Shown: positions 46,430-52,857 of the stretch, in pieces
Layout of the letters: every line of letters starts with the position of its first letter
Position numbering within the stretch: the stretch's first letter is position 1
DNA from: Hamiltosporidium tvaerminnensis FI-OER-3-3
Lineage: Eukaryota > Fungi > Microsporidia
Assembly (NCBI GenBank): GCA_022605425.2
Contig: CM061255.1
Coordinates: 434,001-498,000, forward strand
DNA length: 64,000 nucleotides
Direction: 5' to 3'
The notes under the pieces: model-generated
The model's input: only the letters and a program-made list of their open reading frames with translations
The model's database searches: none
What the model was told of the DNA's origin: nothing
Made by a program: the position numbers and the translations under genes

Positions 46430-47150
46430 GAAAATAAAGAAATAGAAGTCTAAGAAATAAATAGAAAGAACTAATTGAAAGAAATAAAAGTTTAAGAAAT
46501 AAAGAAAAACTAATAGAAATAAATGTAAGAACTAATAAAAAAGAATATAAATGTAATAACTAATAAAGAAAAACTAATAGAAGAATATAAAAAGAAATAA
46601 GAAAAGAATAAAAATAAAGAGAAAAGAATAAAAGAAGAGAAATAAAAAAATAAGAATATAAAAAATAAGAAAAGAATAAAAGAAGAGAAATAAAAAAATA
46701 AGAAAAGAATAAAAGAAAAGAATAAAAGAAGAGAAATAAAAAAATAAGAAAAGAATAAAAAAAAAGAAAAACTAATAGAAGAATATAAAAGAAAAGAAGA
46801 GAAATAAAAAAATAAAAAAGAAATAAAAAATAAGAAAAGAATAAAAGAAGAGAAATAAAAAAATAAGAAAAGAATAAAAGAAAAGAATAAAAGAAGAGAA
46901 ATAAAAAAATAAGAAAAGAATAAAAAAAAAGAAAAACTAATAGAAGAATATAAAAGAAAAGAAGAGAAATAAAAAAATAAAAAAGAAATAAAAACTAATA
47001 GAAGAATATAAAAGAAAAGAAATAAAAAAATAAGAAAAGAATAAAAGATAAAAGAAGAGAAATAAATAAAAAAGAAAAGAAATAAGAAAAGAAATAAGAA
47101 AAGAAATAAATAGAAGAACAAAGAAGAAATAAAAAATAAAATATAAGAAA
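46430..47150. repeat. A/G-rich low-complexity tract with an internal 165-bp duplication
   Basis: Built from AAGAAAAGAATAAA-type units; ACTAATAGAAGAATAT at 46771 and 46936. Confidence 0.9.
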
Positions 47151-47177: not shown

Positions 47178-47824
47178 TTATTCTTCCCTTCTTTCACTAC
47201 TTCTCTTTCCATATTTTCTTTTATGAAACGGTCTTTTAGCATAAGCAGGTGAAACAGATAACTTATGTTCAGTTCCAATTTCTTTTCCGTTAAATTCTTT
47301 AAAAAAATTATCTTTGGTTTCTTCATCAGTGAACTCAGCAAAAACATACCCGGCTTTTGTACCTGAGGGTGCGATAATAGAACAAGATTTACCAAAAAGA
47401 TTAGAAAGACTTTCTTCTGACATGTCAGAAGGAAACCCAGCAACATATAACTTATTCTGAACAATTCTAGAAGGATCTTCTTTAGGTTTAGAGGGTAAAG
47501 AAGACTTCTTGGCATAAGAAAGTACAACTTTCTTACCATTCAACTCTACTTCTCCACTTTCTACTGCTTTTATAGCAGCATTGTTGTCAGAATATTCGAT
47601 AAATCCTAATTTCATTTTTCTGTCGTCTCGAATACGAGTACTTATTGATAATCCACGTCTAAAGTTAGTATCAGACTAAAAGTCATCATTCTCAGTCACA
47701 CGGACCAAGATTTTATCATCACTTACAGTTCACCATATTTTGAAAAAGTGTCCAATAAAAGCTGGAGTGTCACTTTATCTTCGATATCTTTCAAAACAAC
47801 TATTCTGCTTTTTCTTAAAGTCAT
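47178..47824 (-). CDS. Two-RRM RNA-binding protein, 192 aa, two exons (47824-47727 and 47658-47178)
   Basis: Exon 1 (MTLRKSRIVVLKDIEDKVTLQLLLDTFSKYGEL) joins in frame to RGLSISTRIRDDRKMKLGFIEY..., completing RRM1. RRM2 has KLYVAGFP and GYVFAEF. Start context TACCCCATCAAATG. Confidence 0.9.
47659..47726 (-). other. Spliceosomal intron, 68 nt, phase 2
   Basis: 5' GTAAGT, branch point TACTAAC (47670-47664), 3' TTTAG. Removing it restores the reading frame. Confidence 0.93.
47671..47722 (-). ncRNA. Intronic box C/D snoRNA, U18/snR18-like guide for LSU rRNA 2'-O-methylation
   Basis: Box C GTGATGA (47722-47716), guide TCTTGGTCCGTGT (47710-47698), D' CTGA (47695-47692), C' ATGATGA (47689-47683), D CTGA (47674-47671). 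The guide is antisense to the conserved LSU sequence ACACGGACCAAG. Confidence 0.85.
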
Positions 47825-48106
47825 TTGATGGGGTAATTTTATAAAAAATTAAAAAAGGAAAGAAAAATTAAAAAATGGGGGGGAGGTATAAGGGGGTAAT
47901 ATAAGGGATTATATATGTAGCTTAATATAAGAGGATAATTGGAATAATATAAATGGGTAATAAGGGATATTATAAGAGAGGGTAATAAGAGGATAATAAG
48001 GGATATTATAAGAGGGTAATATAAGAGAGGGTAATATAGAATAAGATATAGAGTGTTTTAAGTAAGAGACATATATGGGGTATAAAGATAGTCTTGTTAA
48101 CTAATA

Positions 48107-48830
48107 TTTTATTTAAAAATATCAAATCTTTTTTAAAACAGTAGCAAGTGTTATATTTGTTTTCATGACATTAACGCAGTTCTAGGTTTAACATAAGTAA
48201 GTGTTACCTCAGGAATCCATCAGTGTCACTTGAAATACTTATATTCCAAAGCCTTTCATCTACCAGGTGTGTAGAACCTAATTACTAGGCGATTCAGTTG
48301 CCCGGAGTTCGTTTATGCCCGTTGTATAGAGTGTGATCGAAGGCAGAATCCCCCCGGGCACCCCCAAGACTATGCAGCATTCCCACTTACTCTACACTTT
48401 CGAACCCAATAAACTTCTAACTATGATATATTTCAGAGATTTACATGGGGTCCACCTAGACAGTGCAATGTCATACCAACAGGTATAACCTGCTACTTAG
48501 CTCTCCCGGCTTTAAATGATTTTTATTTTTATATCTCCCAGGCGCTAAGTCTTCTAACCGAGTGAGCAAGGCTAGATTTCCATGCTTTTACATGGCAATT
48601 ACCTACAAGTTCAGCTGCGGTCTGCAATCTGGTTACATAAAAAACTACAAATAAATTTGTAGAAAAAGTTTCTTCATTTCGAGACCTCTCCTCCTCATAA
48701 CAATTCCGATTGAACAACCAAAGATGTAGTGTGGTTTTATTCCCACCAAAAATCCAAACAATGACCTCACACCAGTTTGACACACTCATTGCCAAGCAGA
48801 AAGTTTTTTATGTGGTTATCTTCCCTCCAC
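48107..48830 (-). mobile_element. ~730-bp repeat, copy G
   Basis: Full length and colinear with copies A and F. Possible imperfect TSD TTAA(C/T)TAATATT on both sides. Confidence 0.92.
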
Positions 48831-49051: not shown

Positions 49052-52000
49052 ATGGGTAGAAAGAAAAATATTAGCAGCGAAATATCGAATAATACCAAAA
49101 TAAAGGCTGCAAACGACGCTGATGAGGTGAAGAAGAGTGATAGTGAGGTACAAAAATGTAAGCTACACCCACCGGCGATTTCCCTACCTTCCTCCTCCTA
49201 CACAACAATAACACCTCTACCACCAAGCCAAACATGCAGTAAAATGCAAAATAGTGGGCTTAACACCTTACCTTCGCCTAATGCACCAGTTCCCTCTTCG
49301 GTTGAAGTCTCTGCGTGCGAGCCATCGTACGACATGACAAGCCGCTGTACTCTAGCTATTCCGGAAGGTAACAGGCTAATGGCATTGTGGACGATATTCG
49401 ATTCCGTAACAGCCGACTCGAAGGAATGGCCTCGAATTGTTTTTTTTGCAGTACAGACAAGGTTTGAAAGAATGCCAAGAAATGGCTGGACAGAGCTTCA
49501 CAGGTACCATAATGAGAAATTCGGCTGCACTGAAACTCTCGAAGTGTTAAAAAAATTGGCACAAAGTGAGATGGGAAAGGAAGTAAAATCAGAAGAGAAT
49601 GGAGAGCGACGTAGAATCGCCACTTGTCTCTCTGATACATGCACCTTGACCGATACCACGGAGTACATAAACCTGAGAGATAAATTCTTGAATAAAGTCA
49701 AAGAAATCTCGGAGAACGAAATTGGAAAAGTGGTGGTCCGAACTAGAAAACATCCAAATGAATTGGTGATAGTAAAGTTCTGGATCTCATTAATCGAGTA
49801 GTCGGTGAATATGCGAGAGCTCATGTACCTGAGTCAATTACGGAAGCCGCGTATATCATGCAAGCTGCGCAGATATGCTATGATGAGGCAACACGTAAAG
49901 AAAAGCCTAGATCCGCTTGGAAGGAAAACATAGAAAGTAAAATTTCTAAGCTAGTACTTTCCAAAGATCTTCTCGAGAAGGCTCGTAAGCAGGAAAAGCT
50001 CTCCACTTCGGAAACGAAGAGCCTTAAGAAAATCATGCGAGAGTTTAATTTAAACTTGAGCAGTGTAACTGATCTTTCTGAGGCTTTAGTTAAGAAGAAT
50101 GAGTCTTTGAATGTTTATGAGAAAAAAATTGCGATGCATGAAAGTAGGAAGCAATTCCGAAAGAAGAATCGTATGTTTGAGCTTTTCAGAGGTCGATGTT
50201 ATCGTGGGTTATCTGAGCGTGTAGAATCCGAGCATGTGGTTAGTCGTGATGAAATTTTGAGTTTTTGGTCTACAATGTGGAACAAAAATGATGACACAGT
50301 CACGTATGATGATTATTTGATTCCATTTGTACCAGATAATCATCCAACCACGTTTCCTTTACTTGATGAATTTGTAAGTATCATTAATTGGCTTTCCAAT
50401 TGGAAAGCTGCTGGAATTGATGGTATTTAGAATTTTTTCATTGAGAAACTTACAACTCTACACAAATATCTTTATGATATTGTGAAAGTTATATGTTTAG
50501 AAGGAAAATCTCAAGCTGATTGGTTTTACTGCGGGCTTACCTATTTGATACCCAAAGGAATTCCACGAAGAGGCTCTGACTACAGGCCAATCACTTGTAT
50601 GTCCAACCTCTATAAGTTAACGACTAAGTGTGTAACGAAAGTTGTTTCAACTTGAAGTGGAAAGGCGAGGGTTGCTTGCAGAGAACCAATTAGGGGCGGT
50701 AAGAGGTGTGCAGGGAGCGAAAGAGCAGGCTCTACTGAATATTGCCTTAAATAAAGAGTATGGAAATAATCTTAAGGCAACATGGATTGATGTTAAAAAA
50801 GCTTATGATTCAATTGACTATGCTTATTTAACTCAATACATTAAAAACCTTAATTTACCTGATTGGATCCTGAAATTTATTGAGGTAATTATATCAAAAT
50901 GGAAAATTGATATATCAGTAGGGCCTGAAAAAATCATGAGCAAGAAGATTGATAGAGGGATTCTACAAGGAGATAGTTTGTCACCTTTGTTATTCGTGTT
51001 GTGTATGGATCCATTAAGCCGAAAGCTTAATGAAAAATACACAAAAGTGACAGTACAAACAGATGCAGAATCCCATTCTACTAATCATCTCTTGTTTATT
51101 GATGATCTTAAGCTCCTTGCAAAAGACAGCTCCACATTGAGTGCTATGACAGGCGAGGAAAAGGAATTTTTAGAGGTGATTGGCTTAGAGATTAACAAAG
51201 AGAAGTCAGCCACAAATGATAAGTGTTGTGAAGATACTGCTACTCTTCTAGAAGGTGTTAGTGTTTACAAATATTTAGGAATAATAGAAGATAGCAGAAG
51301 AATTCCAACACGTAGCTCATTTTAAGAAGTACAGAGCAAACTTATATCAAGAGTTGAAAGACTTTGTCACACTAGATTAAATGCAAAAAATTTATTTTCT
51401 GCAATCAATCAACATGCGATATCGTTAATCAACTACCACATAGGAGTACTTCGACTTGAACCGGCTGACTTCTCTAAGTTAGATGATGCAGTGCGTGCGG
51501 TGTTGGTGAAGAATAAGATACATCTCCGCCCAGGATGTAAAGAGCGTTTATACCTTCCTAGAACAGAACTTGGAAGAGGCCTACATAGTGTTGAGTTGCG
51601 AAGCGAACATATGCTTCTGCAACTCTTGGATTGTCTCGAAAAAAGTAAAGAAATATCAACTAGACGAGCAGCAATCCTCAAGGTGGAAAATAATAATAAA
51701 ACCCATCTTGCACTAATAAAAGGCTTCTTAAAAGTAAAGTAAAGGTTGGTAGAAGAAGTCACTAAGAAAAGTTTAGAAGAAGCCCAACTTGCAAAACTAT
51801 ATAACGAAATAGAAAAACGAAAACTCCATTCAAAGTTATATAATGCAAGAAAAAATGAGCTTGTGAGTGTTAGTGACTCTTCAAGGTGGTTAAAGAGAGG
51901 AAATATTAGGCCACGAAATGAAGCTGTGTTCTGCTATATCCAGGATAGAAATGTATTCTGGGGAGCAGATGGTATGTGTCAACATTGCGGGAAGTCTGGT

Positions 52001-52857
52001 AAGACTGTAGATCATCTAGCAACTCGATGTGAAAAAATGCTAGGTCATAATTACACTAGACGGCATAATGAAGTGGTTAGATGCCTACACTTACTTCTCT
52101 TGAATAGATATAAGTTTAAGTCTTCAAAACGAATTAGGAGTCACTCAGTTCAAGAAATTCTTGATAATGAGTATGCAGAGATAAGAGTGGACACCAGAAT
52201 TAAAACTGATGTTAAAATTCGGAATAACAGACCGGACATATTTATTTTAGATAAGAAGAAGAATAAGATAACACTCATTGAAGTAGGAATCACTTCCCAA
52301 GATTCACTTCAAATAGTTGAAACTGAAAAACTTAGGAAGTATGACCTGCTAGCCAATGAGTTGGGCCTTATTTATAAGTGTAGTGTTGAGATAATCCCTT
52401 ATATGATGACCTGGGACGGTATTGTGACAAAATACCATAAATCTCATATTAAAAGACTAGAAATACCCATGAATGTAGAGGCATACATTCAGTCTATAGT
52501 ACTTAAGAAAACAGTCGAAACAATTTCCTTTGATCGACGAAGAGGACTTGAGTAAGGACTAAATGCCGAAGAGAGCTGGGAGAGAGCGTCAATGGGTGTT
52601 ATTATGAGATCAGAGATGCATGAGGAACCAATACCCCCTTTAAAAGAATCGAAAACAGAGGAAGATGGTGAAAAAAAATTTAAACCAAAAAATAAAGCAC
52701 CCCTCATTTCACAAGGAGGAACCACTTTAGAGGAACCGACCAATAACATAAATGAAGAGTCTGATTTGGAAGAATAGACAGCAGTGGTTAAAGAGGCAGA
52801 AGAAAACATAAAAAAAATTGTAAAAATATTTTAACGCAGAATTTTATTAAATAAAAT
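49007..52857 (+). mobile_element. Non-LTR retrotransposon with RT and restriction-like endonuclease (R4/R2-like RLE group), inactivated
   Basis: WKAAGIDG, DYRPITC, WIDVKKAYDS, GILQGDSLSPLLF and HLLFIDDLKL; CCHC knuckle CQHC..TVDHLATRC; RHNEV, RPDI, LIEVGI, KLRKYDLLA. Stops at 50428, 51323, 51740 and 52553 plus frameshifts. Termini are approximate. Confidence 0.93.

What the first reader, a model, noticed from the sequence alone, without database searches (positions are those of the whole stretch)
47659..47726. A 68-nt intron that is essentially all snoRNA: a minimal U18-like box C/D RNA with boxes fused to the splice signals
Seen: the minus-strand intron reads GTAA[GTGATGA]TAAAA-TCTTGGTCCGTGT-GA[CTGA]GA[ATGATGA]CTTTTAGT[CTGA]TACTAAC-TTTAG. 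All four boxes (C, D', C', D) are perfect consensus within 52 nt. Box C shares the GT of the 5' splice site GTAAGT, box D touches the branch sequence with no spacer, and there is no terminal stem. Established: the guide is antisense to the conserved LSU motif GAAACACGGACCAAGGAG, and the D'+5 rule selects the A in AC[A]CGG, the site methylated by U18/snR18 (yeast Am649). U18 is intron-hosted in yeast EFB1 and vertebrate RPL4. Intronic C/D snoRNAs normally sit tens of nt upstream of the branch point, and microsporidian introns are typically ~25-30 nt. Inference: the excised lariat itself could be the snoRNP, with the 2'-5' branch replacing the terminal stem, or k-turn binding by Snu13 could compete with U1/U2 and couple splicing of the RRM gene to snoRNP supply. 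It could also explain why a reduced parasite keeps a long intron. I recall unusually long, motif-bearing introns being reported in a PABP-like gene of other microsporidia, so prior description must be checked.
Basis: partly seen in the sequence, partly recalled or inferred. Interest (0 to 1): 0.9.

Follow-up and report, generated by a model that had tools for sequence, protein, structure and literature searches.

The report
Whole intron doubles as U18 snoRNA
In this microsporidian parasite a 68-letter intron is almost entirely a guide RNA for modifying ribosomal RNA, and its own splice signals appear to close the guide's fold, which would explain why these stripped-down parasites keep this intron and a sister intron.

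Summary
Observation confirmed, with one correction. Genome: Hamiltosporidium tvaerminnensis. The intron is the published microsporidian 'Poly-A long intron' (PMC6349667), where C/D-like motifs were noted without target or family. Here: best Rfam hit SNORD18 (30.4 bits, below cut-off 41); a 13-bp guide to the genome's own LSU rRNA at the U18 site; guide and boxes conserved across seven lineages (0.95-1.0) while spacers drift (about 0.5). The sister RPS23 intron, also flagged by this scan on other DNA, is a different guide (SNORD74/snR64 type) with a compensatory guide/rRNA change, so the two 'similar' introns are two snoRNAs. Correction: a terminal stem can form. Splice-site GUA pairs with branch-sequence UAC in k-turn register (3 invariant bp, so inferred). 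Box C position 5 and box D position 2 change together (U/U or A/A). The published 'hyperextended branchpoint' includes box D. U6/U2 pairing excludes the k-turn, so the snoRNP should assemble after splicing. All four core proteins are encoded; no Dbr1 was found (inconclusive), keeping the lariat-as-guide idea alive (about 0.3). No RNA test was possible. One 2023 paper was unavailable, so prior naming is not excluded.

The parts
47830..47833 (-). CCC-type motif 6-9 nt upstream of the start codon (microsporidian transcription-start signal)
   Evidence: sequence; motif described in PMC5499648
47727..47824 (-). Exon 1 of the two-RRM host gene (32 codons + 2 nt)
47659..47726 (-). 68-nt phase-2 spliceosomal intron = U18-type box C/D guide RNA
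47721..47726 (-). 5' splice site GTAAGT; nt 1-3 are the 5' strand of the inferred terminal stem, nt 4-7 pair with U6
47716..47722 (-). Box C (GUGAUGA), starting at intron nt 5 in all 8 orthologous introns
47698..47710 (-). Antisense guide, 12 WC + 1 GU pairs with LSU rRNA; D'+5 selects LSU A380 (G000:C1:584010)
47692..47695 (-). Box D' (CUGA), invariant in all 8 orthologues
47683..47689 (-). Box C' (AUGAUGA), 2 nt after D': tight K-loop-type internal motif
47675..47682 (-). 8-nt C'-D spacer; unconserved, no rRNA match beyond 6 nt, so no second guide
47671..47674 (-). Box D (CUGA); its GA extends the U2 branch helix
47664..47670 (-). Branch sequence TACTAAC (predicted branch A at 47665); its first three nt are the 3' strand of the inferred terminal stem
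47178..47658 (-). Exon 2 of the host gene (rest of RRM1, RRM2, basic tail)

Best explanation
The intron is the parasite's U18/snR18-type box C/D snoRNA, compressed until guide RNA and intron are the same molecule. Shown by sequence: four boxes, a D' guide against the genome's own LSU rRNA at the U18 site, conservation of boxes and guide across distant microsporidia, and genes for Snu13, two Nop56/58-family proteins and fibrillarin. Inferred step 1: during splicing U6 holds intron nt 4-7 and U2 holds box D's GA plus the branch sequence, so the C/D k-turn cannot form. Inferred step 2: after release, the 5' splice site pairs with the branch sequence (GUA/UAC) as the terminal stem, boxes C and D form the k-turn and the snoRNP assembles. 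Inferred step 3: it 2'-O-methylates LSU A380 (yeast Am649 by my own knowledge). The intron's first base lies 4 nt before box C, where mature C/D snoRNAs begin, so no 5' trimming is needed. I take a linear mature RNA as slightly more likely (about 0.5) than a closed lariat ring (about 0.3). The RPS23 intron does the same job for a SNORD74/snR64-type guide.
For: Rfam best hit SNORD18, E 0.0011, same guide register. Own-genome target and D'+5. Eight orthologous introns at the same phase-2 position: guide column conservation 0.95, D' 1.0, C' 0.96, spacers 0.52-0.57. Box C position 5 and box D position 2 are U/U in 4 introns, A/A in 5 and A/C in 1, across two different genes, and never a standard pair. 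Of box C offsets 4-12, only 5 and 9 give 3 or more splice-site/branch pairs; this intron uses 5 and the own RPS23 intron uses 9. RPS23 intron: SNORD74 E 2.4e-5, 12-bp duplex, guide A>C matched by rRNA U>G relative to the Rfam consensuses. Only these two introns have the box-plus-branch pattern in the genome. Core proteins. Mature-end rule: PMC4053766. Orthologues are efficiently spliced.
Against: Score below the Rfam cut-off (30.4 vs 41). No RNA, RNP or methylation data. The stem is 3 bp of invariant splice-signal bases, unstable alone (+1.1 kcal/mol) and without covariation. A second RPS23 intron has box C at nt 10, one base off register. S. lophii has a degenerate box D. The C5/D2 pattern rests on few independent events. 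No Dbr1 was found to linearise the lariat. In vertebrates about 50 nt between snoRNA and branch point is optimal (PMC8162545).
Confidence: 0.8

Rival explanations
1. Same guide, but the active form is the undebranched lariat: a 62-nt ring in which the 2'-5' bond closes the terminal stem with a 3-nt loop and the 6-nt tail is trimmed or left.
For: No Dbr1-like gene by Pfam DBR1, two metallophosphoesterase profiles or a genome-wide census of GNHE/GNHD codons that recovered all eight known family members and nothing Dbr1-like. No separate Rnt1-like gene, only a 1245-aa protein with two RNase III domains. The geometry is compatible in both introns. Circular archaeal C/D RNAs exist (own knowledge).
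Against: Lariat-held snoRNAs bound core proteins but did not guide modification in yeast and frog (PMC8609340). The Dbr1 search had no true Dbr1 control and used short motifs from memory; 15 GGNH sites could not be cut out; micro-introns or divergence could hide the gene. The intron's ends also fit a canonical linear product.
Confidence: 0.3
2. The snoRNP assembles on unspliced pre-mRNA and is trimmed out by exonucleases, in competition with splicing, so free Snu13 switches the transcript between mRNA and snoRNA (feedback regulation).
For: The k-turn and the U2/U6 pairings use the same bases. One Xrn-family exonuclease is encoded. Yeast has a splicing-independent route for intronic snoRNAs. 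Splicing of the E. cuniculi orthologue changes between time points.
Against: Orthologues are the best-spliced introns in several species. In most lineages box D has shifted to CAGA, which strengthens U2 pairing (-16.5 vs -8.0 kcal/mol against this genome's U2) and favours splicing first. Exact coincidence of snoRNA ends with intron ends is not needed for this route.
Confidence: 0.12
3. The motifs are splicing enhancers (extended U2 pairing and a protein-binding stem-loop) or a relic, and the RNA no longer guides methylation.
For: Published reading stresses the hyperextended branchpoint and a stem-loop. Terminal boxes are non-canonical in most orthologues.
Against: It does not explain a conserved rRNA-antisense element at fixed distance from D' in 8 of 8 orthologues, a different rRNA-antisense element in the RPS23 intron, or the compensatory guide/rRNA change.
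Confidence: 0.06

Closest known systems
Microsporidian 'Poly-A' and S23 long introns (Whelan et al., PMC6349667)
   Same: This is that intron: orthologous gene (SLOPH_1788, Eint_091220 among the hits), same position and size, species listed in their figure. They noted CUGA/UGAUGA motifs and suggested divergent snoRNAs.
   Different: They named no family or target, placed the motifs in the internal conserved region, read the 3' conservation as a hyperextended branchpoint, and left open whether the two introns are homologous. Here they resolve into two different guides whose terminal boxes overlap or abut the splice signals.
U18 / SNORD18 / snR18 (Rfam RF00093)
   Same: Same D' guide sequence and register, same LSU site; intron-hosted.
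   Different: Shorter (52 vs median 68 nt C-to-D), no flanking intron sequence, different host gene, score under the family cut-off. Among 93 non-microsporidian U18-like loci none has a branch sequence directly after box D and one has GTRAG within 14 nt upstream of box C.
Canonical intron-encoded C/D snoRNAs (lariat, Dbr1, Xrn and exosome trimming)
   Same: Release by splicing of a highly expressed host; same core proteins.
   Different: Zero distance to the branch sequence rather than about 50 nt; no 5' leader to trim; terminal stem made of splice signals; Dbr1 not found.
[quoted passage not shown]
   Same: snoRNA held in a lariat and able to bind core proteins.
   Different: Those are larger, often C-branched, species-specific and inactive as guides; this one is A-branched, conserved, and the ring is the snoRNA itself.
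Archaeal pre-tRNA-Trp intron C/D RNA and circular archaeal sRNAs (own knowledge)
   Same: An excised intron that is essentially all C/D guide; 50-60 nt with near-perfect C'/D' boxes.
   Different: Excised by tRNA endonuclease and ligase with a 3'-5' join, not by the spliceosome; double guide; tRNA target.

Membership tests
Box C/D guide snoRNA | Box C (RUGAUGA) near the 5' end and box D (CUGA) near the 3' end | tested here: met
Box C/D guide snoRNA | Internal C'/D' boxes | tested here: met
   perfect consensus; D' invariant in 8 orthologues
Box C/D guide snoRNA | 10-21-nt antisense element to rRNA just upstream of D or D' | tested here: met
   12 WC + 1 GU with own LSU; 35 of 50,000 shuffles
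Box C/D guide snoRNA | Terminal stem bringing C and D together as a k-turn | tested here: inconclusive
   3 bp in register but invariant; C5/D2 co-change supports C-D contact; usual screens ask for 4 bp
Box C/D guide snoRNA | Core proteins available (Snu13, Nop56, Nop58, fibrillarin) | tested here: met
   (the two Nop-domain genes were not assigned individually)
Box C/D guide snoRNA | Stable small RNA, bound to core proteins, target methylated | not testable with these tools
   no RNA run of the organism
U18/SNORD18 (RF00093) | D'+5 target is the A of AC[A]CGG in LSU rRNA | tested here: met
   yeast numbering Am649 is own knowledge
U18/SNORD18 (RF00093) | Reaches the Rfam gathering score | tested here: not met
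   30.4 bits vs 41, though best of 4227 families. Filed as U18-type by target, not as an Rfam member by score
U18/SNORD18 (RF00093) | Descent from U18 rather than convergence on the same site | tested here: inconclusive
   only boxes and guide are alignable; host gene differs
Spliceosomal intron (U2 type) | GT-AG ends, branch sequence, interrupts a reading frame at a conserved position | tested here: met
   U2 and U6 present and complementary
Spliceosomal intron (U2 type) | Spliced reads at these junctions | not testable with these tools
   orthologues shown spliced in PMC6349667 and PMC3629993
Microsporidian Poly-A long intron family | Long conserved intron in the orthologous two-RRM gene | tested here: met
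slb-snoRNA | Accumulates as a stable lariat and lacks guide activity | not testable with these tools
   needs RNA; Dbr1 not found

The most novel reading that the evidence does not exclude
Microsporidia have lost the debranching enzyme and use the spliced lariats of two introns directly as closed-ring methylation guides, with the 5' splice site and branch sequence re-pairing as the k-turn stem and the 2'-5' bond capping it; in species such as Pseudoloma neurophilia, whose only two introns are these, the whole spliceosome would be kept to make two snoRNAs.
Probability: 0.3. Interest if true: 0.9.

Novelty: new variant of a known kind. Interest (0 to 1): 0.7.

Why it matters
It gives a concrete, testable answer to a stated open question: why reduced microsporidia keep two long, conserved, efficiently spliced introns. 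They would supply two rRNA methylation guides with named target nucleotides. P. neurophilia is reported to have only two introns and has both of these, so snoRNA production may be what holds its spliceosome in place. The architecture also breaks the usual spacing rule for intronic C/D snoRNAs: the same bases serve first as splice signals and then as the k-turn. It adds two guides to a microsporidian ncRNA set in which intronic ncRNAs were judged highly unlikely (PMC5499648). If the lariat is the working form, it would contradict the finding that lariat-held snoRNAs are inactive.

Tried and rejected
Rfam at gathering thresholds: nothing in the window; orthologous loci gave only one weak SNORD18 hit. 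Reads: four runs laid; one DNA-like contig held the unspliced stretch and three RNA runs held none of the organism, so no test. A second guide upstream of box D: rejected, 8 nt and unconserved. An extended internal stem II: only the first two pairs recur. Homology of the two introns: rejected as the simplest reading, since they match different Rfam families and different rRNA sites. Loss of 5' exonuclease as the reason for fusion: rejected, an Xrn gene exists. MFE folding: uninformative for k-turns. Other intron-like patterns in the window: 34243 (-) was read and lies in no evident gene; 17561 (+) and 48197 (+) were not followed up. A pattern census of short introns did not exceed its control, so typical intron length here was not established. 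Whelan and Fast 2023 (PMID 38113835) is not held. rRNA sequences of the other species were not available, so the C-to-U change in their guides (wobble or compensation) is untested.

Full report
Observation. The minus strand at 47726-47659 is a 68-nt GT..AG stretch with box C at intron nt 5-11, D' at 32-35, C' at 38-44, D at 53-56 and TACTAAC at 57-63. It interrupts a two-RRM gene in phase 2; unspliced, the frame stops at codon 34. The public 192-aa protein of Hamiltosporidium tvaerminnensis begins with the exon-1 translation and ends with the exon-2 translation, one residue apart. The genome is therefore H. tvaerminnensis or a very close relative. The four-box arrangement arose in 0 of 500 resamples of the window. 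No RNA run contained the organism, so splicing and expression were not tested here.

Identity. Rfam finds nothing at its cut-offs, but the best of 4227 families is SNORD18 at 30.4 bits, E 0.0011, with the guide in the same register. The 12-nt target occurs at ten places in the genome besides the intron; the one examined is in the LSU gene. The duplex has 12 Watson-Crick pairs and one G-U, and the D'+5 rule selects LSU A380, the A of AC[A]CGG; 35 of 50,000 spacer shuffles reach 12 pairs. That this is yeast Am649 is my own knowledge. The genome encodes fibrillarin, two Nop-domain proteins and Snu13.

Conservation. Searching with exon 2 gave orthologues, and their loci gave seven more introns at the same phase-2 position: H. 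magnivora, Spraguea lophii, Encephalitozoon intestinalis, Vairimorpha ceranae, Tubulinosema ratisbonensis and two unnamed assemblies. Column conservation, leaving out the near-identical H. magnivora, is 0.95 in the guide, 1.0 in D', 0.96 in C' and 0.52-0.57 in the spacers; the C-to-D' spacer varies from 20 to 28 nt while box C stays at nt 5 and box D stays against the branch sequence. All select the same A when tested against this genome's LSU. Six carry U for C at one guide position; whether that is a wobble or matched in their rRNA was not testable.

The sister intron. The RPS23 gene has a 71-nt intron of the same plan at G000:C12:2127549-2127479, and a genome-wide pattern finds only these two. 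Its best family is SNORD74 (31.2 bits, E 2.4e-5, also under cut-off), and its guide forms 12 pairs with a different LSU site, selecting C1703. Where the SNORD74 consensus guide has A and the LSU consensus has U, this genome has C and G: one compensatory change. An RPS23 intron from a contig whose protein clusters with Paranosema locustae uS12 keeps the consensus A. The two introns are thus two different guides that look alike because of shared boxes and splice signals.

Correction on the stem. In k-turn register, intron nt 1-3 (GUA) pair with the UAC that follows box D. Among box C offsets 4-12, only 5 and 9 let the 5' splice site pair with the branch sequence by three or more bases; this intron uses 5 and the genome's RPS23 intron uses 9, with four pairs. 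This is an inference: the bases are fixed by splicing, never vary, are unstable alone, and the second RPS23 intron sits at 10, needing a one-base larger bulge. Independent support for C-D contact comes from box C position 5 and box D position 2: U/U in four introns, A/A in five, A/C in one, in two different genes and never a standard pair. The nominal Fisher P is 0.005 (0.048 for seven lineages of one gene), but few events are independent. CAGA at box D is the perfect complement of U2, so the published hyperextended branchpoint is box D plus the branch sequence. This genome's U6 reads ACUGAGA and can pair with intron nt 4-7, which are the k-turn loop and the first G of the sheared pairs. Among 93 U18-like loci from other eukaryotes none has a branch sequence after box D.

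Mechanism. The same bases cannot pair with U2/U6 and form the k-turn, so the likeliest order is splicing first, then refolding and snoRNP assembly. Orthologues are the most efficiently spliced introns in their genomes, which argues against strong competition by Snu13. Mature C/D snoRNAs start 4-5 nt before box C and end 2-5 nt after box D (PMC4053766); intron nt 1 is 4 nt before box C, so a debranched intron needs only 3' trimming. The branch A lies 6 nt after box D, so an undebranched lariat would close the stem with a 3-nt loop, which is also feasible. Lariat-held snoRNAs were inactive in PMC8609340. Against that, I found no Dbr1: nothing with the Pfam domain, eight metallophosphoesterase genes of which six are PPP-type phosphatases by motif, one is Mre11 and one is unassigned with no Dbr1 match among solved structures, and a census of GNHE/GNHD codons that recovered all eight and nothing new of that kind. 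The motifs came from memory, there was no true Dbr1 control, and 15 GGNH sites stayed unread. I put linear at about 0.5 and ring at about 0.3.

What was known. PMC6349667 describes these introns in 15 microsporidia including this species, notes CUGA and UGAUGA motifs in the internal region, and raises the possibility of divergent snoRNAs without family or target. PMC5499648 lists microsporidian snoRNAs, never mentions U18, and calls intronic ncRNAs highly unlikely. A full-text search for microsporidia and intronic snoRNA returns only the first paper. Whelan and Fast 2023 could not be read, so earlier naming is not excluded. The intron and the snoRNA suspicion are known; the family and target assignment, the split into two guides and the splice-signal k-turn appear new. 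I class it as a new variant of a known kind, interest 0.7.

Handling notes. One slip: one search searched solved structures with the stored public protein P0297, which is the spliced product, so it amounts to the joined step. I did not use that result and repeated the search with exon 2 alone, which shows only generic RRM relatives (ELAV, PABP, hnRNP), so the 'poly(A)-binding' label is not established.

Noticed in passing
G000:C12:2127549-2127479 (-), L017: 71-nt RPS23 intron is a SNORD74/snR64-type whole-intron guide with a compensatory guide/rRNA change; predicted target LSU C1703.
   Followed up: yes
G000:C12:1091599-1091718 (-), L197: U6 snRNA has ACUGAGA in place of ACAGAGA, giving Watson-Crick pairing with AGU of the GUAAGU splice site.
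   Followed up: partly
G000 whole genome: No Dbr1-like gene found by profiles or motif census; no separate Rnt1-like gene, one 1245-aa protein with two RNase III domains, one Xrn gene.
   Followed up: partly
G000:C10:549589-549790 and 630175-630376: Two near-identical U2 snRNA copies in opposite orientation on the window's contig.
   Followed up: no
L026:1001-1552; L027:585-1178; L028:586-1179: Orthologous coding sequences without the intron and without a nearby U18-like guide: spliced RNA contigs or intron loss, not distinguishable here.
   Followed up: partly
L158, L159, L162: RPS23 of Gurleya vavrai and Cucumispora dikerogammari has no intron; whether the U74-type guide survives elsewhere in those genomes is unknown.
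   Followed up: partly
L161 (GCA_040285465.1): A bird-louse assembly holds a microsporidian contig whose RPS23 clusters with Paranosema locustae and has the snoRNA intron with box C UGAAGA, box D CAGA and D' CUGC.
   Followed up: partly
window 49052-52555 (+): Broken non-LTR-retrotransposon-like element in several frames; reverse transcriptase domain at 50642-51325.
   Followed up: partly
window 46430-47150 and 47887-48027: Long low-complexity repeat tract just downstream of the host gene and a short degenerate repeat upstream.
   Followed up: no
window 48180-48600: Stretch richer in G+C upstream of the host gene with no Rfam match; possibly a mobile-element end.
   Followed up: partly
G000:C13:392249-392821 (+), L155: 564-aa metallophosphoesterase with no clear relative among solved structures.
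   Followed up: partly
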